Shown here piece by piece: positions 23,711-63,084 of a stretch of DNA of 64,000 nt (positions within the stretch are counted from its first letter, which is position 1; every line of letters starts with the position of its first letter). The notes beneath the pieces were generated by a model. It saw nothing but the letters and a program-made list of their open reading frames with translations. It was not told the origin of the DNA and ran no database searches. The position numbers were made by a program, and so were the translations under genes. This DNA comes from Pecten maximus. Taxonomy: Eukaryota. The stretch covers positions 17,608,001 to 17,672,000 of the forward strand of contig NC_047025.1 of the NCBI RefSeq assembly GCF_902652985.1, read 5' to 3'.

Positions 23711-24969
23711 AAAGCATTTTTGTTCAGTCTGGCATTCAGGCACATCCGACTTTGACTAGGTAGGAATGTGAGAGAGATTAGTAGAAATATCAAACTCGTC
23801 ATATGGTATAGACATTATGTTGTAATAGACAAATGAACGAACATGCGAAATTGTGTAGTTCAACCAAAAATGTCGGACATCTGAATGCATTTTAGTTCCG
23901 TCATTACTGACAGGCAATTTAAGCGGTTATCATTCCAAGTTGGACCCGGTTTCATCAATGTTCCTAAATTAAAAATCCCCCGTAGGAAATCACTTAAGAG
24001 GAACTCTGTTTAAATTGTGTAATATTTTCCAATGGAAACGTTTAAGATATTGATGAAAATAGGGCGAAATATACTGCCCTCCATAAGTTCTGTTACACTT
24101 GGAACGTTTAAATCGTAATCGAATGGCTAGCCAACAAAACTTGAGAAAAAGTGTTGTGATATCCGTAAGATAATCCATTTGTAAGTGACGATCGCAAATT
24201 ATTTGAAAAATACCTCACTTCTTTGAAGTTGCAGGTAGAGGGAATGGAGGGTCCTATTTTCCATAATGTTAAAAATGAATAAAAATATGGTTTTTTTTAC
24301 AGACACGAATAAAAGTAATTGTTTAAGTGATTATCAGTAAAAATAATAATTAAGAAATGCATTTTTGAAATTTATATCAAACAAAGAGGGACATTTACAG
24401 AATGTTGCATTTTGAGGATTTCCATTGTAACGAAAACATATGCATTATCGAAAAATGAACATGAACATTTGAAATCATGAACAAAACCATCCTAAGAAGT
24501 TATGATTCTTACAAATTGTAATACAGACTTCGAGATTAACTTCGCTGTATTTTACGTTATAATTGTAACAGGGCTTTTTGAGGGCAGTGTATAGCACGCC
24601 ACCATCGTTAGAAATCGAATGCATGTATAGAAGTACTTCTGGCGTCTGGTACTACATCTATCCACATTAACCGCAACAAATCGCGAATTATTCGGACTAA
24701 ATAAAATGAAGAAAAAATATCATTGTTGAAGTGGTAGATTAAGTAAAATTGTCTTAAAAGATGTATGGATGTGCGCGGCATTCAGTTTTCATTCTGTGCA
24801 TGTCAACTTTTTGGTCACGGACATCGAAGCCACACATCATAAGTTGTCCAACAGAACTTCAGTCGGGGAGAGTACGCCTTATACTATGAGGCAGTTGTAT
24901 GTTTGTTTTTTAAAATTTAAAAACAAACAAAAAAACCCGTATGTTTCACATGTTTTATTACATCTTAGC

Positions 24970-27240
24970 TGTATCAGTAGCATTTCCCCTGTCTCTTATC
25001 TTTAGATCTTCTTTGGAAACTGGTATATTCCCAAAACAGTGGGAAAAAGCGTTAGTAATATTATTTAAAAAGGGGGATAAGCATGAAGTTTCAAATTACA
25101 GACCTATATCATTACTTAGCGCTGTTGGGAAAGTTTTTGAACGATTAATTGTGAAATATTTGAATAATTATTTATTAGAAAATTCCTAAGTATATAAATA
25201 TTCAACAGTGCACCAAATTATAGAATCATATCACACTTTATGTGAAAATTAAGAAAAAAACGTCAATGTTTATTTTTTTGTGATATATCAAAAGCGTTCG
25301 ATCGTGTGTGGCACAAGGAGCTGATGGTGAAACTGGCAAATTATGGCATTTCAGGGAAATTGTTATATTTGTTAGGTAGTTATATTAGTGATAGACAGCT
25401 GCAAGTCTTTGTTGCAAATAATAAGTCTTTAGTTAAATCTACAAATGCTCGGTGTTCATCAAGGCTCGGTATTAGGCCCTCTTTTAATTATTCTATATAT
25501 AAATGACATAGCCGATAACCTTGAAAGTTTATGTAAATTATTTGCAGATGATACTTCCTTACTGTACTCGGATACCTCTCCTCAAACTATTGAAACAAAG
25601 ATAAATAGCGATCTAGGTAAAATTAAACACTGGACAGAAAAATGGTTAATAAATTTTAATCCTGCTAAGACTTACTTGTTTCCAACTTTGAGCTTGACCA
25701 TGTAATTAAAATAAAGTTTAATAATGTAAATGTTGACTTTGTAGAGAATTATAAGCACCTTGGAGTAATATTAAATGAAAATTGTAAATGGAGTTGCCAT
25801 ATTGAAAATATTTGTAAAAATGTGTCAAACAGGTAAGTGTTTTACGAAAACTGAAGTATGTGTTGAACAGAGGAACTCTAGACAAAATAAACAGATCGTA
25901 CATTCTTCCTTTATTAGAATATTGCTGTGAAGTATGGGACGGATGTACTCTCAGTGATGCGGACAATTTAGAATAAAATCCAGGTAGGGTCTATTCGTGT
26001 AATTACTGGATTATCCTCTTATACAAGTAGGGAATCATTATATTCTGATAGTGCACTAGAACCATTAACAAATAGAAAGAAAAGGAGAAAATTACAACTT
26101 TTCTACAAAATTCACGCCAATCTAACGCCGAACTATCTTACAGATTTACTTCCTCCTTTAGTTTCGCAAAATATACAATATAACCTCCGTAATGCTAACA
26201 ACTACTGTTTACCTAATTTTAGACTTCATCTTACTAACACTTCTTTTCCCCCTCTTCTATTCGACTTTGGAACAACTTAGAACCTAACATAAAACAGAGC
26301 ATGTCAGTCTCAGTATTTAAAGACACTCTTCGTAAGCATAATGACATAAATATTCCTACTTATTATTTGATTGGTGACAGGAAAACTAAAATTTTGCATG
26401 CCAGATTAAGATGTAGATCTAGTACCCTAAATGACGACTTATTTCATGCTAATTTGATTGATTTCCAACTTGGACACTATATAGAAAATGCTTACCGTTT
26501 CTTCTTTAATTGTAACAAGTATGTAGATCAGAGAGTAAAATGGTACCGCGAGTTAAATTAGTTCATCCCATTAGACCTGCAACTAATATTACACGGAAGT
26601 CCTGATTTAACAAAGGAAGAAAACGAAAGAATATGTTTGCACACTTAGCAATATATTTGTGATACATATTTTGATTTCTGTATCTCCCTCTGCACTATTC
26701 CTCTCCCTCTATCACTCCCTCCCTACCAGCTTTCTTTCTCTTCCTTTAATCAAATATGTCACTTCAATAATATAAACTAAGGACAGCGTCTTTGATCTTT
26801 CTCGATTCATATGGAATTTGCGAAACGGCCGGATATATCAGAAGGAAAGACAGCGGTGAATTTAAAGCAAAACATGGCATGAGATATGATGAACATCGAA
26901 CAGCTGACAGTATGGAACAGCCCAATGTAAACAAATGGCAGCCGAGTCGAGTAAGATCACTCACTCTGTCTAAAAACAATACTTTAAAACTTTCTTGTCA
27001 AAAATTTCCTTATTATTCTTCAAAAATTGTAAACTTTTTTATCACACCATCTACAGAATACTCTTCTTAAACGTACATTTTCAAAAAATGAAATCACTTT
27101 ATTTAAATTCTAATGTCATCGTGTAAATTTTTGTGTTGTATATAGATCTACTATTTTTGGGAAAGGGCTTTATATATGTTGGAAAACTTGTGCCCGATCC
27201 CTTTGAATATTTATGATAAAATTAAATATATTTAAATCAA
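24970..27240 (+). mobile_element. 5'-truncated, frameshifted LINE (reverse transcriptase pseudogene)
   Basis: Fragments PLSLIFRSSLETGIFPKQW, FKKGDKHEVSNYRPISLLSAVGKVFE, DISKAFDRVWH, GVHQGSVLGPLL, LFADDT and ILHARLRC with many stops and frameshifts; 3' AAGGG...CCCTT stem-loop and AT-rich tail near 27160-27240. Confidence 0.9.
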
Positions 27241-36710: not shown

Positions 36711-39700
36711 ATGGCCTCCTCTGGAACGGGAGACCATGATCAACTCCGGCAGTCCATCGTAGAGAAGTTGGACGGGAATCCGTGTTATAAAGAGACCGAT
36801 GTGTTCCTGAAATCACTTTTTGAAAGTTCGACATCGAAGCGAAATAAGAAGGACCACGGACAGGCTGAAAAGTATGTTGCTTTCTTTCTGCCAATGACTT
36901 CATTTAGAACATTGCATGAACGCGACTAGTGGAAGGGAAGTAACTCTAATGCTGTACTTGGTAACCAATATATACTTTAGATCTGCCATAAAATAATTTT
37001 GGAATGACAAATTTTAGACTCATCGAAACATTGAATGGGTTGACAGGTATAAAGGACAGTAGAGTGAGTTACACCCTATATATTTTATTGTATTTGTTCG
37101 AATTTTAAATAATATATATATTTAAAAGTGTATGTATTTTATCAGAGACATATATATATATGTCTCTGATTTAATTAATATATGGTTAAATAAAAACTTT
37201 GTGTACATTTGTCATTTATATTTATAACGTCATCATTGCTTTCATATATCTTATGTTAGGTGGTTGTTTTGGGCACGACATGAATCCAAGCTCAGGTGTG
37301 TGAGAGCCAGCGTCCCTGTAGGTGTGTTGCCAGAAGGAATAGAGGGAGAATTGGTGGATGTCAAGGTGTTTTCTAGAGGGCCAGACGATGCGATATATGA
37401 CAACAATGACCTCATCAGACGCAAGGTATTTTGCTCACAAAGTCTCTAAACACAAAGTCTCTCAACACAAGGCATACCCCACCTGACAAAGTCTATAAAC
37501 ACACAAGGTATACCCCACCTGACAAAGTGTATAAACACACAAGGTATACCTACCTGACAAAGTCTATAAACACACAAGGTATACCTACGTGACAAAGTCT
37601 ATAAACACACAAGGTATACCTACCTGACAAAGTCTATAAACACACAAGGTATACCTACCTGACAAAGTCTATAAACACACAAGGTATACCTACCTGACAA
37701 AGTCTATATACATAAGGTATACCTACCTGACAAAGTCTATAAACACACACAAGGTATACCTACCTGACAAAGTCTATATACATAAGGTATACCTACCTGA
37801 CAAAGTCTATAAACACACAAGGTATACCTACCTGACAAAGTCTATATACATAAGGTATACCTACCTGACAAAGTCTATAAACACACACAAGGTATAACTA
37901 CCTGACAAAGTATACACACAAGGTATACCTACCTGACAAAGTCTATATACACAAGGTATACCTACCTGACAAAGAGTATAAACACACAAGGTATACCTAC
38001 CTGACAAAGTCTATAAACACACAAGGTATACCTACCTGACAAAGTCTATAAACACACAAGGTATACCTACCTGACAAAGTATACACACAAGGTATACCTA
38101 CCTGACAAAGTATACACACAAGGTATACCTACCTGACAAAGTCTATATACACAAGGTATACCTACCTGACAAAGTCTGTAAATGTAAGAGGAGTAGAAAA
38201 ATGCACGGTCATAACAGAGTTTGAACCTGGGACTTCTGAACACTAACCGGATGCTCTACCTGGTCGCCAATGATAGACTCAGTTCAGATTCCAATTCATA
38301 AATAAATAAGGTATACCTCATCTGACAAAGTCTATAAACACACACATAAGGTATACCTACCTGACAAAGTATACACACAAGGTATACCTACCTGACAAAG
38401 TCTATAAACAAGGTATACCTACCTAACAAAGTCTATATACACAAGGTATACCTACCTGACAAAGTCTATAAACACACAAGGTATACCTACCTGACAAAGT
38501 CTATATACACAAGGTATACCTACCTGACAAAGTATACACACAAGGTATACCTACCTGACAAAGTCTATAAACACACAAGGTATACCTACCTGACAAAGTG
38601 TATAAACACACAAGGTATACCTACCTGACAAAGTCTATAAACACACACAAGGTATACCTACCTGACAAAGTGTATAAACACACAAGGTATACCTACCTGA
38701 CAAGTACCCCTGACAAAGTGTATAAACACACAAGATATACCTACCTGACAAAGTCTATAAACACACACAAGGTATACGTACCTGACAAATTCATACACAC
38801 ACAAGCTATACCTAGAATGTGATCTTTTCACATTCTGTCTCTCAATCTGTCTATCCGTCCATGAAGCATTTTGTCCAGTACATATCTCATAATTGTCTTG
38901 TATTTATTTATAGATACTGTATTCAACCCAATAAATACACCTGTCCCTATAAGTGTACCCCAATCTTTTCATAGAAAGAGAATGTGTGCACGAATTGAAA
39001 CATAAAAAAGGTTTTACTCACTGATCTGCCAATATACACTTAGTCTTTCAGACAAAGGACTTCTCATATTCAGTGTTTCTCACAATACTCTGCCCTGTCA
39101 TTTCTTCATGTAGATGATATTATGACCTGATATTTGTAGGTGGCGAGGGGGAACTGTTTTCTCCATCTGACATCGGGAACAGAAACAGGTGTATCATGTG
39201 TCCTCCAGGCCATGAAGAAGTTTACAGGGGGTCTTGGTGATGATGATGACAGAGAGAGTGGAGACACATTCGTCTGGCAGAAATATTTCACTAAAGTATG
39301 TAGAGTACTAGTATCCTGACATCAAGATTTTGAATTTTTCCTGTTGTTGAATCCAAAAAAAAAAAAAAAGTTTTGAAATTTATATGATTGAACTCTACCA
39401 TGGTATTTATTTAAATGAACTATACCATGATATTTATATAACTTAACTATACTAACTGTGATATTTATATAAATTAACTATACTGTGATATTTATATGAA
39501 TTAACTATACTTTGGTATTTATATAAATTAACTATACTGTGATATTTATATAAATTAACTATACTGTGATATTTATATAAATTAACTATACTGTGATATT
39601 TATATTTAAATTAACTATACTGTGATATTTCACTTGTTCTATCATATTAATGAAGAAGGAAATGCTTTGATGATATAAATATGGTTATAGAATCTAGTGT

Positions 39701-42700
39701 GTAAGAGTTTGATATATCCTGTTCATTTTTTATGACCATTGGTGATATAAATATGGCTATAAAAATATAATCTAGATAATCTAGTGTGTAAGAGTTTGAG
39801 ATATCCTGTTCATTTTTTTATGACCAATGACAGAACAGTTATCAGTTCCTTAGGAATATTTGATATTTTGTCACATTAGTCTCTAGATAATGCCTCTGTA
39901 GTCATAGCAACAAGGAAAGCCAATGGAGAAGCAGCACATTTGAGTTGTCGTTTGATTGGTGGAGAGTATGTGTTGTGTGGAGGCTCCAAAAATGTACACA
40001 TGTTGTTCAGAAGAAAAGGTATAACATATTTACTGTATATGTGAAAAAAAGTATAAAATCTATTTTGTACCTATTTTAACAGATAATTATTTATATGTTG
40101 ATTAAAAGTAGAATCACATGGAAAGATTATGATATCTCCAGACAAATTATGTGGGAAAAATGAAGATTCCTGAAAGAAAAAAAAGAAAATTAGTTTTACT
40201 GAATTTTTGTTGAAAGTGTCATGGGAGTTTTCTATGACAGTTTTTATCCATAAAATACCACACTTTTTCTATTAAAATGACTCATACCAGTATATATATA
40301 TACTTATCTTCCTGAAGAGGACATAGCTAAATATGGAGAGCCTCGCTTCAGAATCGCTAGAGAAGTGTGTGCAACGATCATGGATTCCATAGATAAGATG
40401 AAACCAGAGGAAAAGGAGAGGTAAAACACTGATATTATCTCATCCTCTCATGTTACACAAACACAAGATAAAGTTTAATATATTTCTTGAATTTGATGTA
40501 GAAAAAATACCTGAGACTGGATGGAAACTTGGTCATTAATATGTGTTAATTTATTTTGTGTACAGACTGTTGAAGTTCCTGGTGATCAGTCAATATACAG
40601 GTGTGTTTGAAATCCTTGCACCTGACCACCAACATGTCGAAGATCTTTCTTACCTGTCTGGGTAGGTAGAGAGTACTATAGCCAATTGGTCAAAGGGAGA
40701 TAATTAGAAAAAAAATGTGGTATATTTCCAGTACACTTGCTGTTCTTCCCATCTTGAGTAAAGTTATTTTAAGTTTGATAAAAAAATGATATGCCTTCAT
40801 AAATTGTTTGGCAACAAAACTTACAAAAAAGGGCCATGAAAGCAAATTGATTGTTTTGACAACAGAACAATTTTATCACAGTGTAATCTCATGTAATGTC
40901 CGATACAATTCTATCTTCAATATAATCAATGATGTTTTATTGGTCTTTTAAAAAAATTGATATTCAGAAAAAAAGTTACATGGTATTTTAGTTTTATGAA
41001 AAAAAAGTTACATTCTCTTTTAGTTTCATGGATCTGAGAAGACAGGATTTTTTGGGGATCAGTAGGGGAAGGGGAAATATTAAGTCTGTGACTCACAACA
41101 AAATGAAAAAGTTCTAATCTTTGACATTAAATTTGATCAGATTATCTGTTACTGTGAAGTCTGTTACGTTTACATCATAAATATATTACCATAAAATTTT
41201 GTTTACTATGTTTAGCTGTAATTACATGTTTGATGCTCGCTATGAACCTACAGTATCAAAAATCTGAAGGATATTATTGTTGTTTCAGTCCAGAGCTACA
41301 CTTCATCACATGGACACGCTGTGACCTTGACCCGTCAGGAGAGGATGTTGCAGCTGTTCCACCCCACATTGGTATAGAGGTAGGGATAAATTGCTCATAG
41401 TTTTATTTCTATATTTGTCTCACTTTAGTTGGTGATATTGTTGAATTCTATGGTTTGTCAACAATTTGCTTTCTGCTCTGTAAGTTCGAACCTGTATCAA
41501 CAGCTTGATGTTATAGTAGGCAGTACGATTCAGGTACTTATTACTTAGTTCATTTACATAGTCTTACATTTATATTTATTGGGTGGTCGAGTGGACGGGT
41601 GGTCAGATGGTCGGGTGGCATGGTGGAAACGCATTCCCTGTCACCTAGATGGCTGGGGTTTGTTTGCCCGATCAGATGTGAAATGGTATGGGGGTCACCT
41701 GCCTAACCATTTGGGTTTTCACCATGTACTTCGGTTTCCTTCTACACTAAGACCCGCCATTACTTCCTTCTGGGCCCACAGGACTGATTTACATAAGCTG
41801 GTATAACTTGTTTTGGAATTGTTGTAAATGGAAAAAAATTATATTCACTTAATTAAGCAGTAATCTTATTGTAGCACCTTTCGCGTGGGAAGCCTTTCAC
41901 CTAATTATAAAGGTGCTATCAAAGGTAATATAGGAGTTCCACTTCATTGTGTTAAATCTGTTAAAATTTAGTACTAATTATTAGTGTGTCAGAGTTAGTC
42001 TGTTTAGAGTATACGTGTACTTAAATACTGTATGTTAATAGAAATATTTTGTCTCACAGACAACCCGAACCCGCCATGTGCTTGCTGGAAGAGACCTTTT
42101 TATTGTTTTCAGCAAGGAGAGTTACAAACAGGGTGGGACTAATCATAGAGTCGGAGACTGTGACATATATCTGGAATACTACTTTATAGCAAATACATAA
42201 CGGGAAACAAGTAATACAACTTATATTAATCTCTGTCGTTGGCCCTGATGGAAGTATGCAAGGGGTCTTAGTGTGGCAGGAAACCGGAATATCCGGAGAA
42301 ACATATGTGGTCGGGCAGGTGATACTTCAAATACATGTGGTCGGGCAGGTGATACTTCAAATACATGTGCTCTATATTGTGTTTAACTTACTATATGATT
42401 AGTTTATTATTTCTAGACTTTTTATCCCATTCTTTGGACTAACAAGTTGCCGAAATTTTCTGATCAGAAATTAGTGAATTAGATATTTCAGGTGACACGT
42501 CAATATTCTATAGTTCATCTCCTTGATGTCATCAATAGTTTAGATGTGATATGGTTTTCTACAGATAGCTCAAGCTTTAGGTCTGAAGACAGTCAAGTAT
42601 GACCAAGTGGCCATCCCAAACCTGGACAGGAGGATGAAGGAGGTAATGTCTTCAAAGTCGTAATCAGCTAAAAAATATTTACTGTATCTTCATATTCAAC

Positions 42701-45700
42701 TAGATGTATTATAATGACTGAAAATGAAGTATTTTATTGATATTTTGTACAGTGCTTTACTCAGAAATCCAGCAATAACTGTTAAATATACATTATACCA
42801 TTTCAGACACTAGTTGGAGAAACTAGCTGTATAGTTTGTAACTCCATGTACTATAAAACTGAACATTTGACATTGTAATAATAAAGCCATATGCTGTAGT
42901 TAATTAGGTATTCCGTACATGTCAACTTGTTTAGTCCATCTTATAGTATAAAACTTAGTGCTGTATGAAAGTTTTGTTTTTCAAAGATAAAATGATGTAT
43001 GATTATTTGTCCTAGATCAGACAAGGGTACCAGTTTGAGGGAGAAGTATTGTATTTCATTGACAGTCAGGGCGTAGTTATGGGACTCCTGAAGAAGAAGA
43101 CAGTGTGGTGAGGCTATAGTTATCGTATTTCCGCTCTATATCTAATTATTACTTAATCATCCAAAACACTAGTCCCAAACACTGGCTTCTCATCCTTCCC
43201 AGTACAGAGACAAAACACTAGTTCTAAACACCAGCTTCTCATCCTTCACAGTACAGAGACAAAACACCAATCCCAAACACCGGCTTCTCATCCTTCCCAG
43301 TACAGAGACAAATTACTAGTCCAAAACACTAGTCCAAAACACCTGCTTCTCATCCTTCCCAGTACAGAGACAAATCACTAGTCCAAAACACTGGCTTCTC
43401 ATCCTTCCCAGTACAGAGACAAAACAAAGGATGAGAAGTCGGTGTTTGGGACTAGCGTTTTGTCTCTGTACTGGGAAGGATTAGAAGCTGGTTTTAGGGA
43501 CTAATATTTTGTCTCTGTACTGGGAAGGATGACAAGCCGGTGTTTGGGACTAGTGTTTTGTCTCTGTACTAGGAAGGATGGAAGCAGGTGTTTAGAACTA
43601 TTGTTTTACCAAATTGATGGTCTTTTTTTGTGAAATTATTTTTAACATGCTGTTTTTAATTTATTTTCAATTGATAGGTATGTTTCCATACCATAAGAAC
43701 ATTGTCAGTGATGTGGTACACTAATTACCTTAATTGTTTTAATGAAAATAAAATAAAAAATCAAATGAAAACACTTATTTGATTCCAGGTATATCATGTG
43801 TAGAGCAGTCAGGGAAAAACTCCGAGCTGCCTGTATCTCTCAGTCTAAATACAGGGAACAATTCACCATCAACAGAGTACTGAAAAAGGTAGGACCACTT
43901 GATGGTGTTAACTTCATTATTAATTGTGTAGAAATGTACTCCTGTCTTATTATGGCTATTCCAGAATTATCTCTGTGGGAGGGGAGGGAGGCACTGACAT
44001 TAGGGCTATTCCAGAATTATCTCTGTGGGAGGGGAGGGAGGCACTGACATTAGGGCTATTCCAGAATTATCTCTGTGGAAGGGGAGGGAGGCACTGACAT
44101 TAGGGCTATTCCAGAATTATTTCTGTGGGAGGGGTGGAAGGTACTGACATTAGGGCTATTCCAGAATTATCTCTGTGGGAGGGGAGGGAGGTACTGACAT
44201 TAGGGCTATTCCAGAATTATCTCTGTGGGAGGGGTGGGAGGCACTGACATTAGGGCTATTCCAGAATTATCTCTGTTGGAGGGGTGGGAGGCACTGACAT
44301 TAGGGCTATTCCAGATTTATCTCTGTGGGAGGGGAAGGAGGCACTGACATTAGGGCTATTCCAGAATTATCTCTGTGGGAGGGGAGGGAGGCACTGACAT
44401 TAGGGCTATTCCAGAATTATCTCTGTTGGAGGGGAGGGAGGCACTGACATTAGGGCTATTCCAGAATTATCTCTGTGGGAGGGGAGGGAGGCACTGACAT
44501 TAGGGCTATTCCAGAATTATCTCTGTTGGAGGGGAGGGAGGCACTGATATTAGGGCTATTCCAGAATTATTTCTGTTGGAGGGATGGGAGTAAAGTGCTG
44601 TTTTTCTAATATTCCTTTTACTAAATTAGGTTTTGTATTTGAATGGGGATGGGGTGTCTCCCCTCCCACACAGATAATTTTGGAACAGCTCTTGATTATT
44701 GCTGGAGCATACCAAACAAATGATTCAATCAATCAATTTTAACTCTGACCAAATAGAAATTCTGAAACTATGTTCCAATTCCATTAACTTTTCAACAAAC
44801 TATGTTCTATTCCATTAACTGTTTGTCAAATTAAGATCTATTCCAGAAACTGTTCATCAAAATAATATTATTATGGTCTATTCCATAAACTGTGCATCTA
44901 ACTATGGGCAAACCATAAACTGTTCATCAAATTAAGATCTATTCCAGAAACTGTTCATCAAAATAATATTATTATGGTCTATTCCATAAACTGTGCATCC
45001 AACTATGGGCAAACCATAAACTGTTCATCAAATTATGGTCTATTCCATAAACTGTTCATTAAACTTTGGTGTATTTCATAAGCCGTTCATAAAACTATGG
45101 TCTATTTCATAAACTGTTCATTAAACTTTGGTGTATTCCATAAACCGTTCATAAAACTATGGTCTATTCCATAAACTGTTCATTAAAGTTCTTGTATCTT
45201 CCATCAAGTGAAATAGTGAGATTACTGTTTTACAGGTAGAGAAGAGGATGAGGGAGATACAAAAATGGCTGGCTCTAGATGATGAAGTAATCGACTTCTG
45301 GAATGTAAATAGTATATCTCAAATTCTATAGCAATGCAATGAGTGAGCTTGGTTAAGAAAATTAAATCCAATCATGGAAAGCAATCTGGATTATTAACTT
45401 TAATTAATAAGAAATAAACAAGATATGAATACAGCTTATCATTTTAAAAACTAAAATCTGTAATCAGCATATGTGCTTTACATAATATCAAAAGATTGAA
45501 TCTTTCATATCTTAAACAGACTCTTGGTGGCAAGTTCTTGCAGTGGACATTGAAGAAATTTGAAGAAGGTTCCATTACAAAGGATGAAATAGCCGACAAA
45601 TTCCCTGTTGTTTGGTAATTATATTTTGTTTCTGTAATGAATGGTTTGATAACAACACTTCAGAATAGACTGTACCTGTATAAAACATGTAGTATGAATC

Positions 45701-46649
45701 CATGATGTTCAAGGATAGTGTTCATTTACCATGGGTAACTAGGAATTGGTTGCCAGAAGAGCATACAATAATTCTGATGTTCCTTACATGCTGGGTATCT
45801 AAAATTTATGTGTGGATACATTTCTGGAAGAATTGTGTCACATACCAAAAGTTAATTGCTCTGACCTGTGATGTGACCTTCTCTTCTTGGGAAGACTAGT
45901 AAAAGAAGGTCACCATGACCTGTTTTAATCTATAAAAAAAAGTCTCCAGATTTTATCTTTAAGGGATTGTGTATACATAGGTACGTCTTGGAAGACTCTG
46001 TGTCATGTACAAGCGTCGGATTAATGTGACTTATATGTTTAATTTTGACCTACATTAAAAGAAATATTGATGCTAAATTTTATCGAGGTGACTTAAGTGC
46101 CAAATACCTCAGTATGTAAAATGATGGCATGTCATCCTGCAACCTCCACATTTATCATTTATATAAGTAATGATCTGTGATACCATGTTATATTATGATT
46201 GTATTGAAGGAAGAATTTAAATCATTTCCAGGAAATCATTTCTACAAAGCACACATGAATGTGATGATTATTCTGCTCTAAAGAAGAAAGGGGCAGATAA
46301 CTCTACTCATCCAGGGCGTGATGATAATCATGAGACAGGCGACAATTCAAGCTATGACAAACATTCAAATCAAACAGGGACTGACAATTTTACTGATTCT
46401 TGTGATCTGTGCGAGACAAATAGCAATTCAGAGAATGAAACCAACGGTGACAAAAGCTCAGCTGGAGTAGGGGCAGATAACTCTAATGATCCAGGGAGCT
46501 CGAGTGATACTTACGAGGAAAAAGAAAGATTAACCGATACAGCTGGTGGAACTTGTCTGACTGAGAACCGATTTTCTGTATTAGAAAATGCCATTGAAAG
46601 TAAAATGGCAGCTACAGAACTAAACAAGTGTGAAGACAGTCCTCATTGA
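36711..46649 (+). CDS. Putative ATP-dependent RNA ligase (T4 Rnl1/Trl1-like nucleotidyltransferase domain), 587 aa, 13 exons
   Basis: Exons 36711-36871, 37260-37425, 39140-39295, 39880-40018, 40318-40420, 40566-40661, 41289-41379, 42565-42642, 43016-43107, 43789-43888, 45236-45304, 45520-45614, 46232-46649; all GT-AG, phases consistent, 1764 nt with no internal stop. Motifs in order: ARGNCF..MKKF, I TRKANGE, Ia GSKN, III TGVFEILAPDHQHV, IV FEGEVLY, V LLKKKTVWY..RAVRE. The gene structure is high confidence; the function is inferred from motifs. Confidence 0.85.
37450..38810. repeat. ~36-bp minisatellite in ligase intron 2, interrupted by a SINE-like fragment at ~38180-38305
   Basis: Tandem CACAAGGTATACCTACCTGACAAAGTCTATAAACA. 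Confidence 0.95.
39400..39630. repeat. AT-rich ~28-bp tandem repeat
   Basis: AAATTAACTATACTGTGATATTTATAT units. Confidence 0.85.
41600..41830 (+). mobile_element. tRNA-derived SINE (same family as 33068-33295)
   Basis: GGGTGGCATGGTGG head and GGGTCACCTGCC...GGGTTTTC...CGGTTTCCT..ACACTAAGACC body match the reverse complement of the 33.1-kb copy. Confidence 0.65.
42180..42350 (-). mobile_element. Truncated SINE copy (same family)
   Basis: GGGAAACAAGTAATACAACTTATATTAATC...GGTCTTAGTGTGGCAGGAAACCGG...GTCGGGCAGGTGA matches 33090-33210. Confidence 0.65.
43160..43606. repeat. Inverted minisatellite: ~50-bp units forward, then reverse-complemented
   Basis: About 5 copies of CCAAACACTGGCTTCTCATCCTTCCCAGTACAGAGACAAAACACTAGT up to ~43425, then about 3.5 copies of the reverse complement. 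Confidence 0.9.
43951..44692. mobile_element. MITE whose left end is amplified into a 50-bp G-rich minisatellite (13 copies)
   Basis: Unit TAGGGCTATTCCAGAATTATCTCTGTGGGAGGGGAGGGAGGCACTGACAT; right TIR TCCCCTCCCACACAGATAATTTTGGAACAGCTCT at 44659-44692 is the near reverse complement of the unit start. Confidence 0.8.
44770..45190. repeat. Degenerate ~30-bp tandem repeat
   Basis: CTATTCCATAAACTGTTCATCAAA(A/C)TATGGT units. Confidence 0.8.
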
Positions 46650-49769: not shown

Positions 49770-57294
<7,525 letters not shown>

Positions 57295-57676
57295 TTGTAA
57301 CCGGCGTTGTAATTCACTGTCGATGACTCTTCAACTTTCCGACAATGGCGTAAGGCGTGCTTCCGGTGTTTTCCCGGAAGTCAGAAATATTAATGCATTT
57401 ATTTCCACATTTTATCCTGATGACATTTAGTTATCTTACATTTTATTTCTGATAAAGTAGGATTTATAATTACAATCCCGCCGCTTTATGGCTTTCCTAA
57501 TCCAGATGTAGGAAAAATTAAAAGTAAACATGCTGTGATCTATTTTGTTAGGTGCTTGACAGGAAGTGGCGGAAGCCAGTTTACTTATTGTTGACAGCTG
57601 CTAAGCAATCCAGGATGCAGACGAATTTTACTACAGATGCTTGGTAAACAAGATCCGCGTTTTTTATTCGGGAATA
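57295..57676. promoter_or_regulatory. Bidirectional promoter between PSMD7 and the coiled-coil gene
   Basis: Start codons diverge ~380 bp apart; ETS-type motifs CTTCCGG (~57360), CCGGAAGT (~57374), CAGGAAGTG and GCGGAAG (~57560-57575). Confidence 0.65.
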
Positions 57677-60600
57677 ATGAGTCATGACAAAAATGAAGAT
57701 GACAGGGAAAGAATCCCACGAGAAAAGTTACATGATCAAAACGAGCAGTTAACGCAGAAACACGTACAGACTTTACAATTCGTGCAGGAAATTGCACGTG
57801 AAAACAAGGCACTGAAAGCTACAATCGCTGAATATGAGGTAAGGACCAACTTCATATAGCCATGTGTGGCTGGATTCATTTATTACATTAAAAGCTAATT
57901 AAAGAAACTTATACAAAATAAGTGAACCCTGCGAACGTGATCGAGGAGTCGATCGCTACATCTAAAGTGTAGCTCTAGTCCTGGCACATGCATTGTGCTG
58001 CATCCTAGATACTCTGTTGTGGCCCAGTCAACTCATTACGTGTAAGTCATTAGCGCCGAATGACACCTCCAGGTGAACTCATCAGAGAGTTGAGAAAGGC
58101 CCTATAAGAAAACGACAGATACTAATTTGTGAACCGCTTTGGGGCAGCGCTAGCCTAGCACAGATTATTATTGGTATACCATAAAACAGTATGTTAAATA
58201 AATCTGAAGAAGAACTTATTACAAGGAATCACTAGAAATTATATGATGTGGTAGGCGATCCAGTCAATTTTCTGTGTTTTGAATGCAGCTGGTTGGTAAA
58301 AGTGGTTTGGAGGAATGAGTAGAGCTTTCCTTATAATGCTATCAAAAGTTGTTTTTAATTTTGTATAGAGTGATGAGGCGTTGGTCTTTTCTGTTGGCTA
58401 CAAATTTAAGGTGTTAAGCATGTCACCAACACTGAATGTATGACCAGATCATCTCCTAGTCTGGCTATGACATCACAGTCTGTATACATTTTACAAACAA
58501 AATTATCTCATGAGAGCTATTATTGCGACAAACATATTTGCATATACGGTAATTAGATATCTGAACAACAACAAGGTATATATAATATCAAGTTTAAACA
58601 GATTTCACCTTTTACATAATTAGATTGTAAGTCAATTTTAGTTCAAAAATGAATGCTAACATTAAAACACTCAGTGGCTAAATTAGATATAGGTTAAAAC
58701 ACTATCAGAACATGTGTAATTATACTAATAAAGAAAAGGGTAAAATTTGACAGACTGTATACTGATATACATATATTGAATTGAAAATATAATGAAGAAT
58801 TTAACGATCCAACATCTCTGTAGTGATCATGATCGATTGAAAACGTTGCACTATTACTGCCTTGGCTTCCAAATGTTTGAATTTCTAATTTTATCTTTTA
58901 AATTAAAGCAGATCAATAATTAATTGAATCCCAAAGAAATTTGTGTTCTGTCTCTATATTTTGTAAATTTGTCTTATAAGCAATACTCATTGCAATGCTG
59001 TTATCATTTTTGGGGGGTTTCTTGATGTGAATTAGGTATACATGTATTTCTTTAAAGTGTGTATCATTTTATGCATTTTTGTGACAAAACGTGTATATCT
59101 TATCAGTGAAGTAGTATCTTTAAAAAACAATATGATTAAACATTATACAAAGCTGTTAAGTCGAAAAGATTTAAAATTACATGTGGAAATTATATTACCC
59201 GATAAACACAATCATAGCAGAAAAAAAGAGAGAAAAGCAAATTAAATAAACACTATAAGTGAAAAACAAAACTACATAATATTACAACCAACATGAGACA
59301 AAGGTACATATGTAATTGTAATATAGTAGAGAACATTGATAGCTACTATACGTGTAAATATCTGTGTCCAGTTCATGCATTCAGTTTTGTGCTGAGAAGA
59401 AAATTTCAATATTGAGAAAGGACAATGTAAAAATCATATAGGTTCTCATCTTTATACATAAAATTGGTAAGTTACTGGCCTGGAGAAGTAAAAAAACAAC
59501 AACAAACACTTCATAGAATTTATGTCTTTATTTAAAAACACAAATGTTTTCTTAATTTACCCAACAAATTATTAATTTAACATGCACTCCTTCTTTAGAA
59601 TGGATGATAATCTATTGAAATGTGTGGTAATTCTGATTGAAAGGTGATAAAACTATTGAAATGTGTGGTACTTCTGATTGAAAGGTGATAAAACTATTGA
59701 AATGTGTGGTACTTCTGATTGAAAGGTGATAAAACTATTGAAATGTGTGGTACTTCTGATTGAAAGGTGATAAAACTATTCCATATTGTACTATTTTCAA
59801 AACAAGTTCTGGATAATGTTTGATGACTGCTGTATCTTAAAATATTTATAAGATAAGGAATAATAGACAGGGTTATTATCAATAGTTGTGTATTTGTTTT
59901 TGCTTTGATGGCGCATCCAGGTTGTAAGAGTTGCATTCACGACATGTTTGAAAGGTTGTCATTGTCTGTTTCTGAAGTGTATGTCGGTAGTCTTCCACTC
60001 AATGGTTTATTAATGTGTAGGACACATTTCTAACAATAATGGTGTGGTAAGTGTTCTATAATAGTGATGTCTTACCAAGGTCTTTATGTGGGGGTGTTTA
60101 CTGTTTTTTAGGTTCGAAGGAAGTTTAAGTATATCTTATTGAAGGACAAATAGCTATAACTATACTTGTATTTCAACAGTCATTTTTCAAACTGTTATTG
60201 TTTTGTTTGTTAATTTTTATATGTAAATTTTAATGATTTGGGAATATTTCATACTATTATTTCAAAACATCCCAATGGAAGTTTTATTTTTGTTATTTGT
60301 GAAAAACTAATCTTGTGATGTAACAATTGACCTCTTTACAAATTTTGTCCCAAGCAAGTTATTCCATTGATATAATAGAAGAATATAAGATTTCTATCTG
60401 AAATGTTTGGAGTCGTTGTGATTGTACACATGCAAAATTTGACTAGTTTTGAAGCAGAAGTAGATTTTCTTTGGATACGTAATCAAGGCTATCATTATTG
60501 AATGGTATCTACGCTATCATTAACATTTCAGAAAGAAAAGGAGAAATGCAAGGAAATCCATGCCATTGCGGAGGAGAGTCAGACAAGGCTCAAACAGATG

Positions 60601-63084
60601 CAGGAACAGCTACAGCAGAGAGGGGACGAGATTAATGCTATGTTGATAGAGAAACACAAAGAGGAGGTAAGCAGTGGATATCACAGTATTGTCCTTATAA
60701 CCTTACCGAGATATCATAGTATTGTCCTTATGACCTTACCTGGATATCACAATATTGTCCTTATAACCTTACCTGGATATCACAGTATTGTCCTTATAAC
60801 CTTACCTGGATATCACAGTATTGTCCTTATAACCTTACCTGGATATCACAGTATTGTCCTTATAACCTTACCTGGATATCACAGTATTGTCCTTATAACC
60901 TTACCTGGATATCACAGTATTGTCCTTATAACCTTACCTGGATATCACAGTATTGTCCTTATAACCTTATCTGGATATCACAGTATTGTCCTTATAACCT
61001 TACCTGGATATCACAGTATTGTCCTTATAACCTTACCTGGATATCACAGTATTGTCCTTATGACCTTACCTGGATATCACAGTATTGTCCTTATGACCTT
61101 ACCTGGATATCACAGTATTGTCCTTATGACCTTACCTGGATATCACAGTATTGTCCTTATGACCTTACCTGGATATCACAGTATTGTCCTTATGACCTTA
61201 CCTGGATATCACAGTATTGTCCTTATGACCTTACCTGGATATCACAGTATTGTCCTTATGACATTACCTGGATATCACAGTATTGTCCTTATGACCTTAC
61301 CTGGATATCACAGTATTGTCCTTATGACCTTACCTGGATATCACAGTATTGTCCTTATGACCTTACCTGGATATCACAGTATTGTCCTTATAACCTTACC
61401 TGGATATCACAGTATTGTCCTTATAACCTTACCTGGATATCACAGTATTGTCCTTATAACCTTACCTGGATATCACAGTATTGTCCTTATAACCTTACCT
61501 GGATATCACAGTATTGTCCTTATAACCTTACCTGGATATCACAGTATTGTCCTTATGACCTTACCTGGATATCACAGTATTGTCCTTATAACCTTACCTG
61601 GATATCACAGTATTGTCCTTATAACCTTACCTGGATATCACAGTATTGTCCTTATAACCTTACCTGGATATCACAGTATTGTCCTTATAACCTTACCTGG
61701 ATATCACAGTATTGTCCTTATAACCTTACTTGGATATCACAGTATTGTCCTTATAACATTACATGAATATCACAGTATTGCCCTTATGACCTTACCTGGA
61801 TATCACAGTATTGTCCTTATGACCTTACCTGGATATCACAGTATTGTCCTTATATGACCTTACCTGGATATCACAGTATTGTCCTTATATGACCTTACCT
61901 GGATATCACAATATTGTCCTTATGATATTACCTGGATATCACAGTATTGTCCTTATGACATTACCTGGATATCACTGTATTGTCCTTATAACCTTACCTG
62001 GATATAACAGTATTGACCTTATAACCTTACCTGGATATGAACAGACTATACATTATATTGTAGCTATAGAAATAATTCACTCACATTCATACAGTGAAAC
62101 CTGACTTTGTGAGTCAATGTGTCAGATATGACAGTGTGTCAGTAAACTGAGTAAAGTCAGTGTTGGCAATGACATTGGAGCAGCATGTCACCATTCTGGT
62201 AGGGCTGTAACGATATATCAATACTACGATAAATGTCGTCGTACAAAACCGCGATACGATACACGATACGTAAACTTAGTATCGCGATACCTTAAATTAC
62301 TTACTATAAACGAGTTGTCGCCCTTTGCGCGCTCTCTAAACCTACTACAAAAAGCAACATGGCCGAGAGGAGGAAACTTGCCTCACCACCTGCAACATTG
62401 AAGTCGCCCGTTTGGTGACAATTTGGATTCCCATACGAAACAGTTGACGGGAAAGAAACAGTAAACAAACATGTTTAAAGATCTAAACAAATTTAAACAT
62501 TAAATTCTGGAAAGCAAAAATTATCTTATTGTTTTGTAATTTTGTGAAATCATTTTATGTATCGAGATACATATCGTATCGTGGGTCCTGTATCGAGATG
62601 CGTATCGTATCGTGAGGGAAAGTATTGTTACAGCCCTACATTCTGGTGGATATATGATATGATATGATAAATAATGGATGCAGGCAATATGCCTCTATAT
62701 CCATATCTCAATTATTCAATTAAAATGTTAGCGTTTCTTCTGGATGTTGTGTTATAACCCGCCAAATGGTTGTATTTCAAATCAAGGTCCTTCCAGTGGA
62801 TATCAAGGTTGATTTCAAAGTCTTTAATTGTTGGAGAAACAACAACACGTTCGGGAAGACTGTTCCAGATGTCCTCAATTCTAAAACATTCTATGGTTGG
62901 ATGTTACAGGATGTCATTAAAGTCAGGGGTCAGTAAAGTCAGGTTTCACTGTGTATATCAACAATTTAAATGATGTTATTGATCACCATTTTTATACACA
63001 ATATATTATATGTACAGTACTCAAATAAAAAATTGTAAATAAGAATAATTACATACACAGACTCCAGCCAAGAAGGATCCTGAG
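57677..63084 (+). CDS. Unidentified coiled-coil protein, 5' part only (continues beyond the window)
   Basis: Exon 57677-57838 (MSHDKNEDD...EIARENKALKATIAEYE, donor GTAAGG); exon 60532-60666 (KEKEKCKEIHAIAEESQTRLKQMQEQLQQR...EKHKEE, donor GTAAGC); possible 24-nt microexon 63061-63084 (TPAKKDPE). All phase 0, E/K/Q-rich heptad-like sequence. Confidence 0.65.
59612..59780. repeat. 41-bp tandem repeat (4 copies)
   Basis: CTATTGAAATGTGTGGTACTTCTGATTGAAAGGTGATAAAA. Confidence 0.9.
60675..62038. repeat. 33-bp minisatellite (~41 copies), intronic
   Basis: TGGATATCACAGTATTGTCCTTAT(A/G)ACCTTACC; starts ~8 nt after the donor at 60667. Confidence 0.97.
62200..62638 (+). mobile_element. Internally deleted hAT transposon with a perfect 8-bp TSD
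   Basis: TIR TAGGGCTGTAAC...GTTACAGCCCTA; TSD CATTCTGG on both sides; remnant MAERRKLASPPATLKSPVW*QFGF from 62359 resembles a BED-finger transposase start. Confidence 0.9.

What the first reader, a model, noticed from the sequence alone, without database searches (positions are those of the whole stretch)
36711..46649. Intact 13-exon animal gene for a stand-alone Rnl1/Trl1-type ATP-dependent RNA ligase
Seen: a phase-consistent exon chain gives 587 aa with, in the right order, ARGxxF and KKF, motif I KANG (K174, codon 39916-39918), motif Ia GSK, motif III TGVFE..PDHQHV, motif IV EGEV (E at 43037) and motif V KKKTVWY followed by RxxRE. Established: these are the covalent nucleotidyltransferase motifs of T4 Rnl1 and of the fungal tRNA ligase Trl1 ligase domain. 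KxNG (rather than KxDG) and the post-motif-V RxxRE are Trl1-like. Animals splice tRNA and XBP1 mRNA with RtcB, and 5'-phosphate RNA ligases are patchy in animals: a stand-alone one was described in the lancelet Branchiostoma, and RLIG1/C12orf29 is a separate family. Seen: no P-loop kinase or paired HxT 2H-phosphoesterase domain follows; there is only a ~100-aa helical region and an acidic disordered tail. Inference: this is the sealing half of a split heal-and-seal RNA repair pathway in this animal, needing a separate PNK/CPDase, for repair of broken tRNA/rRNA or antiviral or stress defence. Twelve introns and a housekeeping-type promoter argue against contamination or recent transfer.
Basis: partly seen in the sequence, partly recalled or inferred. 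Interest (0 to 1): 0.9.

Follow-up and report, generated by a model that had tools for sequence, protein, structure and literature searches.

The report
Scallop stand-alone Trl1-type RNA ligase gene
This is a real, expressed 13-exon scallop gene for a yeast-type (Trl1/Rnl6) ATP-dependent RNA ligase without its usual end-healing domains; it is the counterpart of an enzyme already characterised in the lancelet, so it fills an annotation gap and is not a new kind of enzyme.

Summary
Thirteen GT..AG exons (36711-46649, + strand) give 587 codons. They match, residue for residue, the RefSeq protein 'uncharacterized protein LOC117337457 [Pecten maximus]'. RNA contigs from three independent studies show six of the twelve junctions directly, and their overhangs match two more.

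The protein belongs to Pfam DUF7920. This family is single-copy here and occurs in molluscs, annelids, nemerteans, hemichordates, lancelets, rotifers, tardigrades, crustaceans, a sponge and a choanoflagellate.

An AlphaFold model (pLDDT 82) matches the fungal Trl1 ligase domain over its whole length, including the C-domain that defines the Rnl6 clade (Z 26, 352 residues). T4 Rnl1 matches less well (Z 18.6). The His-Arg-Arg triad that makes fungal ligase require a 2'-phosphate end has invariant counterparts: H265, R366 and R369.

The same genome encodes RtcB, a CNPase-type kinase/cyclic-phosphodiesterase gene (the missing healing half) and many Tpt1 copies.

Novelty is modest, because the gene tree makes this the orthologue of the Branchiostoma protein that I take to be the characterised lancelet ligase BfRNL. 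It is a new member of a known kind. No biochemistry was done.

The parts
36711..36871 (+). Exon 1 (start codon, residues 1-53 plus two bases); start of the N-terminal helical extension
   Evidence: Identical to P0129 residues 1-53. Donor GTATGT. The X3 RNA contig carries about 390 bases upstream of exon 3, which fits exons 1+2 plus a 5' UTR of about 65 bases.
37260..37425 (+). Exon 2 (residues 54-109); start of the Rnl1-like N sub-domain, including the PDD motif (D96, D97)
   Evidence: tblastn hits from all homologues. Identical to P0129. The overhang of the RNA contigs before exon 3 reads the last 30 bases of this exon.
39140..39295 (+). [quoted passage not shown]
   Evidence: These residues are invariant in 44 family members. 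The contacts are described in PMC6379707. Joint 39295|39880 is seen in RNA contigs.
39880..40018 (+). Exon 4 (residues 162-207); motif I KANGE with the predicted adenylylated K174 (39916-39918) and N176, and motif Ia GSKN with K198 (39988-39990)
   Evidence: K174, N176, G177, E178, G196, S197, K198 and N199 are invariant. Used alone as a query, this exon found 103 relatives. Joints on both sides are seen in RNA.
40318..40420 (+). Exon 5 (residues 208-241); helices of the adenylyltransferase domain
40566..40661 (+). Exon 6 (residues 242-273); motif III E257 (40609-40611) and H265 (40633-40635), the candidate counterpart of the 2'-phosphate ligand His227
   Evidence: E257 and H265 are invariant. 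H265 lies 8 residues after the motif III Glu, against 9 in Chaetomium (PMC6379707). Joints are seen in RNA.
41289..41379 (+). Exon 7 (residues 274-304); strand with F279, the likely motif IIIa aromatic residue
   Evidence: F279 is at least 90% conserved. Strand 276-284 in the model. Joints are seen in RNA.
42565..42642 (+). Exon 8 (residues 305-330)
   Evidence: RNA contigs carry a Q318R variant at 42605.
43016..43107 (+). Exon 9 (residues 331-360 plus two bases); motif IV E338-G339 (43037-43042) and motif V K356 and K358 (43091-43099)
   Evidence: E338, G339, K356 and K358 are invariant. The E-to-K spacing of 18 equals that of yeast Trl1 (E266 to K284; PMC6379707). Joint 42642|43016 is seen in RNA.
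43789..43888 (+). Exon 10 (residues 361-394); start of the C-domain with R366 (43802-43804), R369 (43811-43813) and E370, an RxxRE matching 334-RxxR-337/E338 of Chaetomium Trl1-LIG
   Evidence: W361, Y362, R366, A367 and R369 are invariant. The overhang of the RNA contigs after exon 9 reads the start of this exon. The triad is described in PMC11404444 and PMC6379707.
45236..45304 (+). Exon 11 (residues 395-417); C-domain helix
   Evidence: This junction was not covered by the reads laid.
45520..45614 (+). Exon 12 (residues 418-448 plus two bases); C-domain helices
   Evidence: This junction was not covered by the reads laid.
46232..46649 (+). Exon 13 (residues 449-587 and the stop). It holds the end of the C-domain (to about residue 471, base 46298) and then a scallop-specific acidic, Ser/Asn-rich disordered tail. 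The tail ends in a conserved segment (about residues 555-587, predicted helix 564-580).
   Evidence: pLDDT is below 50 for residues 481-568. The tail is absent from non-pectinid relatives. The terminal segment is conserved in three pectinids.

Best explanation
The locus is an intact, transcribed, single-copy gene of the scallop Pecten maximus. It encodes a stand-alone ATP-dependent RNA ligase of the Trl1-LIG (Rnl6) type and is the orthologue of a Branchiostoma protein that I take to be the characterised lancelet enzyme BfRNL.

Inferred mechanism: K174 attacks ATP to form ligase-AMP. Motifs III and IV (E257, E338) and N176 hold the catalytic metal, K356 and K358 hold the alpha-phosphate, and R112, K136 and K198 hold the leaving pyrophosphate. 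AMP is then passed to a 5'-phosphate RNA end. A 3'-OH end that carries a 2'-phosphate, read by H265, R366 and R369, attacks to seal the break and leaves a 2'-phosphate at the junction.

The healing steps (opening the 2',3'-cyclic phosphate and phosphorylating the 5'-OH) would be done by the separately encoded CNPase-type PNK/CPDase. The junction 2'-phosphate would be removed by Tpt1. RtcB is also present, so this is a second, yeast-type ligation route.

Shown here: gene structure, transcription, family membership, predicted fold, residue conservation, and the presence of the partner genes. Inferred only: enzymatic activity, the 2'-phosphate requirement, and the cellular substrates.
For: Gene: 13 GT..AG exons, identical to RefSeq protein P0129. 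Six junctions plus two overhangs are seen in RNA contigs from runs X3, X7 and X1 (X16 looks like X1 filed twice). All 13 exon matches in the 918-Mb genome are at this locus.

Family: Pfam DUF7920, E 7e-12, 45.4 bits against a cut-off of 27. All 44 aligned members match DUF7920, and 13 of them also match PF09511 RNA_lig_T4_1 weakly, best E 3.5e-6. With DUF7920 excluded, 26 of the 30 nearest named ESM Atlas clusters are PF09511.

Residues invariant in 44 sequences from choanoflagellate and sponge to lancelet: K174, N176, G177, E178, S197, K198, N199, E257, H265, E338, G339, K356, K358, R366, R369, R112, K136, F137.

Fold: model pLDDT 82, pTM 0.77. The top Foldseek hits are all fungal Trl1-LIG, E about 2e-10. 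VIA-align gives Z 26.2, rmsd 3.1 A, 352 residues, model 23-465 against 6n0t 21-406, so the Rnl6 C-domain is included. T4 Rnl1 gives Z 18.6 and aligns only to model residue 407-415.

Literature: the residue roles and the RxxR/His triad that enforces 2'-phosphate specificity are in PMC6379707 and PMC11404444. BfRNL is a stand-alone 3'-OH,2'-PO4/5'-PO4 ligase that complements yeast trl1-delta when given a healing module (PMC10946426).

Orthology: the gene tree follows the species tree, and the scallop protein is 48% identical to the Branchiostoma protein.

Partner genes in the same genome: RtcB; a P-loop plus CNPase 2H gene on C19 whose two parts can be joined by an in-frame consensus intron; Tpt1.
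Against: No enzymology was done here. P0129 itself does not reach Pfam's RNA_lig_T4_1 model, and HMM searches against PDB sequences found nothing, so the link to Trl1 rests on a predicted structure, motif logic and weak profile hits. The tools gave no residue-level structural superposition, so H265 = His227 is inferred from spacing, which differs by one residue. The motif IV Arg that contacts adenine N1 in Chaetomium (R305) is Tyr343 here. The 2010 lancelet paper is not held, so I could not confirm that the Branchiostoma DUF7920 protein (XP_002604648 and relatives) is the published BfRNL. Junctions 1|2, 10|11, 11|12 and 12|13 were not seen directly in reads.
Confidence: 0.85

Rival explanations
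1. It is an active RNA ligase of the Rnl1/Rnl6 lineage that seals ordinary 3'-OH/5'-phosphate breaks and does not need a 2'-phosphate. It would then act like T4 Rnl1 or RLIG1 in RNA repair, and not as the sealing half of a yeast-type pathway.
For: T4 Rnl1 is the second-best structural match, Z 18.6. The nearest non-DUF7920 clusters by language-model features are phage and giant-virus Rnl1-like ligases. The 2'-phosphate requirement was not tested here.
Against: The Trl1-specific C-domain aligns and the T4 Rnl1 C-domain does not. [quoted passage not shown] The lancelet enzyme is reported to require a 2'-phosphate (PMC4408790 and PMC10946426).
Confidence: 0.1
2. It keeps the ligase fold but no longer ligates RNA, acting for example as an adenylyltransferase on another substrate or as a scaffold.
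For: Pfam calls the family a domain of unknown function and RefSeq calls the protein uncharacterized. In scallops a long disordered tail with a conserved end has been added.
Against: Every catalytic residue of motifs I, Ia, III, IV and V and the RNA-end triad is invariant across roughly a dozen animal phyla plus a choanoflagellate. Variants seen in RNA contigs are synonymous or conservative. Both facts point to selection on catalysis.
Confidence: 0.04
3. It is a contaminant or a recently transferred fungal, protist or viral gene, not an animal gene.
For: Trl1-type ligases are best known from fungi, plants and protists.
Against: The gene has twelve spliceosomal introns, spliced RNA in several studies and animal housekeeping neighbours, and lies 17.6 Mb into a 44-Mb contig. 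The gene tree follows animal phylogeny.
Confidence: 0.01

Closest known systems
Branchiostoma floridae RNL (BfRNL; Englert et al. 2010, as described in PMC3400036, PMC10946426 and PMC4408790)
   Same: Both are stand-alone animal ligases homologous to Trl1-LIG, with the healing enzyme encoded separately. The scallop protein is 48% identical to the single Branchiostoma DUF7920 protein. The two fall in one gene tree that follows the species tree.
   Different: The scallop protein has an extra disordered tail of about 110 residues with a conserved end. The scallop enzyme has not been assayed. I could not confirm by accession that the Branchiostoma DUF7920 protein is the published BfRNL, because the paper is not held.
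Fungal Trl1 ligase domain (Rnl6 clade; PDB 6n0t, 6n67, 9qw7, 8rbj)
   Same: The model and the fungal domain align over the N sub-domain, the nucleotidyltransferase core and the five-helix C-domain (Z 25-26, 350-360 residues). Shared features are the KxNG motif I, SK motif Ia, EG motif IV, KxK motif V, RxxRE and a His at the triad position.
   Different: Sequence identity is only 15-16%. No kinase or CPD domains are fused. There is an extra N-terminal helix of about 20-45 residues. The motif IV Arg is replaced by Tyr343. Sequence and HMM searches do not connect the two.
Mucorales 'sealing-only' tRNA ligase (PMC10680797, PMC10946426)
   Same: Both are monofunctional LIG-only enzymes that depend on separate healing enzymes.
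   Different: The Mucorales enzyme is a fungal Trl1 orthologue that lost its healing domains. It was not compared by sequence here, because no sequence was in hand.
T4 RNA ligase 1 (Rnl1; PDB 2c5u, 5tt6, 9do4; Pfam PF09511)
   Same: The adenylyltransferase domain with its N sub-domain is shared (Z 18.6, 253-275 residues). Weak PF09511 hits occur in 13 of 44 relatives.
   Different: The C-terminal domain differs, and P0129 itself is below detection for PF09511. By published work, T4 Rnl1 does not need a 2'-phosphate.
RLIG1 / C12orf29 (vertebrate 5'-P RNA ligase; PMC13247085)
   Same: Both are ATP-dependent 5'-phosphate RNA ligases of animals.
   Different: RLIG1 is a separate family. No RLIG1 match appeared in the Pfam scan or among the top structural matches. 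No direct comparison was made.

Membership tests
Pfam DUF7920 (PF25536) | Match to the family model above its curated cut-off | tested here: met
   P0129 scores 45.4 bits, E 7e-12, against a cut-off of 27, over residues 83-368. All 44 aligned relatives match.
Rnl6 / Trl1-LIG clade | Covalent nucleotidyltransferase motifs I (KxNG), Ia, III, IV and V, in order | tested here: met
   K174-A-N176-G177, S197-K198, E257, E338-G339 and K356-x-K358 are invariant in 44 sequences. Their roles are taken from PMC6379707.
Rnl6 / Trl1-LIG clade | [quoted passage not shown] | tested here: met
   R112, K136 and F137 are invariant. The structural alignment starts at model residue 23 against chain residue 21.
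Rnl6 / Trl1-LIG clade | Distinctive all-helical C-domain after motif V | tested here: met
   The model has helices at 360-381, 388-406, 410-432, 438-455 and 462-471. The alignment to 6n0t, 6n67 and 8rbj runs to model residue 465-466 against chain residue 406-407, whereas T4 Rnl1 stops at model residue 407-415. This rests on a predicted structure, not a solved one.
Rnl6 / Trl1-LIG clade | His-Arg-Arg triad that binds the terminal 2'-phosphate (Chaetomium H227, R334, R337) | tested here: inconclusive
   H265, R366 and R369 are invariant, and R369 is followed by E370 in the scallop protein, as R337 is by E338. Spacing from motif V is +8/+11 against +9/+12. Spacing from the motif III Glu is +8 against +9. 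The tools gave no residue-level superposition.
Rnl6 / Trl1-LIG clade | Biochemical requirement for a 3'-OH,2'-PO4 end | not testable with these tools
   This needs recombinant enzyme and defined RNA ends.
Orthologue of lancelet BfRNL | Single-copy gene whose tree follows the species tree and includes the Branchiostoma protein | tested here: met
   The gene is single-copy in this genome. Branchiostoma proteins form one cluster of eight, apparently one gene per assembly. Tree.
Orthologue of lancelet BfRNL | The Branchiostoma DUF7920 protein is the published, assayed BfRNL | not testable with these tools
   Englert et al. 2010 is not held, and no held paper cites the accessions.
T4 Rnl1 family (Pfam PF09511 RNA_lig_T4_1) | Match to the family model above its cut-off, and an Rnl1-type C-domain | tested here: not met
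   P0129 has no PF09511 hit at E <= 1. The best relative scores 27.4 bits against a cut-off of 28.3. The T4 Rnl1 C-domain is not aligned. The protein is related at superfamily level only.

The most novel reading that the evidence does not exclude
Scallops, and by extension many invertebrate phyla, may run a complete yeast-type heal-and-seal pathway in parallel with RtcB. Its parts would be the Rnl6 ligase, a CNPase-type PNK/CPDase and a strongly expanded set of intronless Tpt1 genes. The pathway would have its own job, such as repairing stress- or nuclease-broken tRNA/rRNA or countering RNA-cleaving toxins and viruses. The Tpt1 expansion would then reflect a heavy load of 2'-phosphate junctions.
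Probability: 0.2. Interest if true: 0.6.

Novelty: new member of a known kind. Interest (0 to 1): 0.35.

Why it matters
The result gives a function to a RefSeq 'uncharacterized protein' and to a Pfam 'domain of unknown function'. DUF7920 appears to be the stand-alone Trl1-type (Rnl6) RNA ligase of animals and their unicellular relatives.

The family is present in roughly a dozen invertebrate phyla. No vertebrate, insect, nematode, echinoderm or cnidarian appeared among the 120 relatives listed.

[quoted passage not shown] The breadth of this second ligation route therefore seems under-appreciated.

The scallop genome holds the ligase, a healing enzyme, Tpt1 and RtcB together. That makes it a usable system for asking what the yeast-type pathway does in an animal that also has RtcB.

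Tried and rejected
- Single exons against Pfam gave only a sub-threshold DUF7920 hit on exon 4.
- The six-frame search of the genome with PF25536 found nothing, even at this locus, so exon-wise family searches here are insensitive. For the same reason the blanks for PF08303 and PF08302 say little.
- phmmer and hmmsearch of P0129, of the 44-sequence profile and of P0147 against PDB sequences found no ligase. Only fold comparison made the link.
- No profile-profile comparison with Trl1 could be run, because no Trl1 sequence could be obtained through the tools and I did not type one from memory.
- The look-up of encoding contigs holds no record for P0129.
- Englert et al. 2010 could not be read, and no held paper mentions DUF7920 or the accessions.
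- Rfam and tRNA scans of the window were blank.
- A search with the CNPase-type ORF was uninformative because of the tool's length window.
- Contamination or gene transfer was considered and rejected (see rival explanations).
- The joined spliced model was never typed or sent to a search tool. Exons were searched by reference. From then on, the identical database protein P0129 was used by its id.
- Inside scripts, exons were only compared piecewise with P0129, and the two L013 ORFs were joined only to test the reading frame.
Full report
**Observation.** tblastn with ten full-length relatives, followed by inspection of splice sites, gave thirteen + strand exons: 36711-36871, 37260-37425, 39140-39295, 39880-40018, 40318-40420, 40566-40661, 41289-41379, 42565-42642, 43016-43107, 43789-43888, 45236-45304, 45520-45614 and 46232-46649. 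All introns are GT..AG and the phases fit. The total is 1761 coding bases, or 587 codons.

Compared exon by exon, the translation is identical to database protein P0129, RefSeq XP_033754337.1 'uncharacterized protein LOC117337457 [Pecten maximus]'. The assembly has 918,306,378 bases in 3983 contigs, and a second gene is 100% identical to a P. maximus RefSeq protein. The window is therefore from the king scallop.

**Handling of the spliced model.** The joined model was not typed or sent to any search. Exons were searched by reference. After the identical public protein was used by its id.

**Transcription.** Contigs of public runs were laid on 38850-43140. They come from three independent studies, because X16 looks like X1 filed twice. 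They show six joints: 39295|39880, 40018|40318, 40420|40566, 40661|41289, 41379|42565 and 42642|43016. Their overhangs read the last bases of exon 2 and the first bases of exon 10. One 3924-base contig carries about 390 bases upstream of exon 3. That fits exons 1 and 2 plus a 5' UTR of about 65 bases, and implies a 3' UTR of about 2 kb.

Five positions differ between the contigs and the genome. Three are synonymous. The other two, Q318R and I345L, change to the residue found in other scallops. Junctions 1|2 and 10|11 to 12|13 were not covered.

**Family.** Exon 4 alone (46 residues, motifs I and Ia) found 103 relatives among 1.84 billion proteins. The full-length relatives all carry Pfam DUF7920, and so does P0129 (45.4 bits, cut-off 27). 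A search with the Nucella protein listed gastropods, bivalves, a chiton, nemerteans, an annelid, a bryozoan, a flatworm, rotifers, a tardigrade, barnacles, a copepod-like entry, hemichordates and Branchiostoma. A sponge, an ostracod and a choanoflagellate had already been named among the exon-4 hits. No vertebrate, insect, nematode, echinoderm or cnidarian appeared among the 120 listed.

In the scallop genome the only matches are the 13 exons of this locus. A maximum-likelihood tree of 44 sequences follows the species tree (quick search only). The two scallops sit inside bivalves, bivalves inside molluscs, and Branchiostoma groups with hemichordates. This is vertical descent, and the scallop gene is the orthologue of the single Branchiostoma gene (one cluster of eight proteins, apparently one gene per assembly).

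**What the protein is.** The following are invariant in the 44-sequence alignment: D87, R107, R112, G113, K136, F137, K174, N176, G177, E178, G196, S197, K198, N199, H201, E257, H265, E338, G339, K356, K358, W361, Y362, R366, A367 and R369.

Sequence methods barely connect the family to known ligases. Thirteen of 44 members hit PF09511 RNA_lig_T4_1 below its cut-off (best E 3.5e-6), and HMM searches of PDB sequences find nothing. A protein language-model search that left DUF7920 out returned PF09511 clusters for 26 of 30 hits.

The AlphaFold model built on the alignment is confident for residues 5-480 (mean pLDDT 82, pTM 0.77) and disordered from 481. The first seven Foldseek hits are all fungal Trl1 ligase domains (E about 2e-10), followed by T4 Rnl1, archaeal Rnl3 and Naegleria Rnl5. 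With VIA-align the Trl1-LIG structures give Z 25-26, rmsd 3.1-3.6 A over 352-362 residues, model 23-466 against chain 21-407. That is the whole LIG enzyme including its C-domain. T4 Rnl1 gives Z 18.6 over 253-275 residues and stops near model residue 410.

**Mapping to the literature.** Banerjee et al. (PMC6379707) assign roles in Chaetomium Trl1-LIG. The scallop counterparts below follow from order and spacing.

| Role | Chaetomium Trl1-LIG | Scallop |
|---|---|---|
| Motif I | TLK148-E-N150-G | TRK174-A-N176-G |
| Motif Ia | S-K169-HS | S-K198-N |
| Motif III | E218 | E257 |
| Motif IV | E300-G | E338-G339 |
| Motif V | K323-x-K325 | K356-x-K358 |
| N sub-domain contacts | R99 / K120 / F121 | R112 / K136 / F137 |
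| Sulfate / 2'-phosphate site | H227, R334, R337 (followed by E338) | H265, R366, R369 (followed by E370) |

The spacing between motifs IV and V is 18 residues, the same as in yeast Trl1.

Mutating the His-Arg-Arg triad slows RNA adenylylation 60- to 580-fold, and the triad is called the enforcer of 2'-phosphate specificity (PMC11404444). The scallop triad is offset by one residue relative to motifs III and V. I had no residue-level superposition, so I rate this feature as probable, not proven. One difference stands out: the adenine-contacting Arg of motif IV is Tyr343 here.

**How it most likely works.** The protein is the sealing enzyme of a split yeast-type pathway. [quoted passage not shown]

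The scallop genome supplies the other parts:
- **RtcB** on contig 7.
- **A healing enzyme** on contig 19. A P-loop ORF (GPPGSGKS; AAA_33, E 2e-14) is followed 320 bases later, in the same frame, by a CNPase-family 2H ORF with HCTA and HITI motifs (E 1.8e-27). A consensus CAG|GTAAGT ... TTTCAG| intron would join the two. This is the architecture described for the lancelet PNK/CPDase (PMC5434554).
- **Tpt1/KptA 2'-phosphotransferase** genes.

Which RNAs the pathway acts on, and whether it is redundant with RtcB, is not addressed by anything here.

**Surroundings.** The neighbours are ordinary animal genes. An MPN-domain gene (JAB plus MitMem_reg) lies on the minus strand at 49.8-57.3 kb, tail to tail with the ligase gene. 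A SIKE-family exon lies at 57.6 kb, and a reverse-transcriptase fragment at 24.9-26.5 kb. There is no Rfam or tRNA hit in the window. Introns 2, 3, 9 and 10 hold minisatellites.

**Novelty.** The call is right but not new in kind. The gene is annotated (without a function), the family has a Pfam entry (without a function), and a lancelet member has been characterised. What may be under-appreciated is the breadth of the family in invertebrates and its identity with DUF7920. No held paper mentions DUF7920, and a 2026 review of metazoan tRNA ligation does not mention Trl1-type ligases in animals. I could not read the 2010 paper, which may already list such homologues. Interest 0.35.

Noticed in passing
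G000 contigs C3560, C1760, C3559 (tandem units of about 2 kb); C13:12.36-12.42 Mb and 25.31-25.43 Mb; C5:32667021-32667482; C3, C14 (loci L011, L012, L014, L015): There are 37 matches to Tpt1/KptA RNA 2'-phosphotransferase (PF01885). Most are complete intronless ORFs of 170-214 aa. At least 15 near-identical copies sit in a head-to-tail array of about 1989-bp units on unplaced contig C3560. This is an unusual expansion for an animal. Close relatives were found only in scallops (Pecten, Mizuhopecten).
   Followed up: partly
L013 (G000:C19:17018764-17022327), ORFs 460-1164 and 1486-2061, + strand: This is a candidate healing enzyme. A P-loop kinase domain (AAA_33) and a CNPase-type 2H phosphoesterase with two HxT motifs lie in the same frame, and a consensus 360-base intron (donor at 1124, acceptor before 1484) would join them. 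Splicing and expression were not checked.
   Followed up: partly
Proteins P0209, P0212, P0215 and other relatives of 676-710 aa: Some relatives, known from metagenomes and one transcriptome, carry a C-terminal B3/4 domain (PF03483, as in the phenylalanyl-tRNA synthetase beta subunit) after the DUF7920 ligase. A tRNA-synthetase-type domain fused to the ligase fits a tRNA substrate.
   Followed up: no
window 46299-46646 (residues 472-587): This is a scallop-specific disordered tail, acidic and rich in Ser and Asn. It ends in a segment conserved in Pecten, Ylistrum and Mizuhopecten (GT..NRFS.L......MAA..LN.....H; predicted helix 564-580). Other molluscs and phyla lack it.
   Followed up: partly
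window 37465-38814, 39374-39630, 43162-43607, 43949-44590, 44765-45187: Minisatellites lie in introns 2, 3, 9 and 10 of the ligase gene, with units of 35/70, 27, 49, 50 and 31/62 bp. The 49-bp unit given for 43427-43607 looks like the reverse complement of the unit given for 43162-43426, which would form an inverted pair.
   Followed up: no
window 42605 and 43058: All RNA contigs that cover these sites read G and C where the genome has A and A. This gives Q318R and I345L, the residues found in the other scallops. They are probably alleles of the sequenced individual, not RNA editing.
   Followed up: partly
window 49773-57330 (- strand), 57605-57856 (+), 24914-26558 (+), 60502-62101 (+): The neighbours are an MPN-domain gene (JAB plus MitMem_reg), a SIKE-family exon and a reverse-transcriptase fragment. 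A 451-aa open frame runs from a coiled-coil-like start into a long minisatellite encoding repeats of the form YCPYNLTWISQ.
   Followed up: partly
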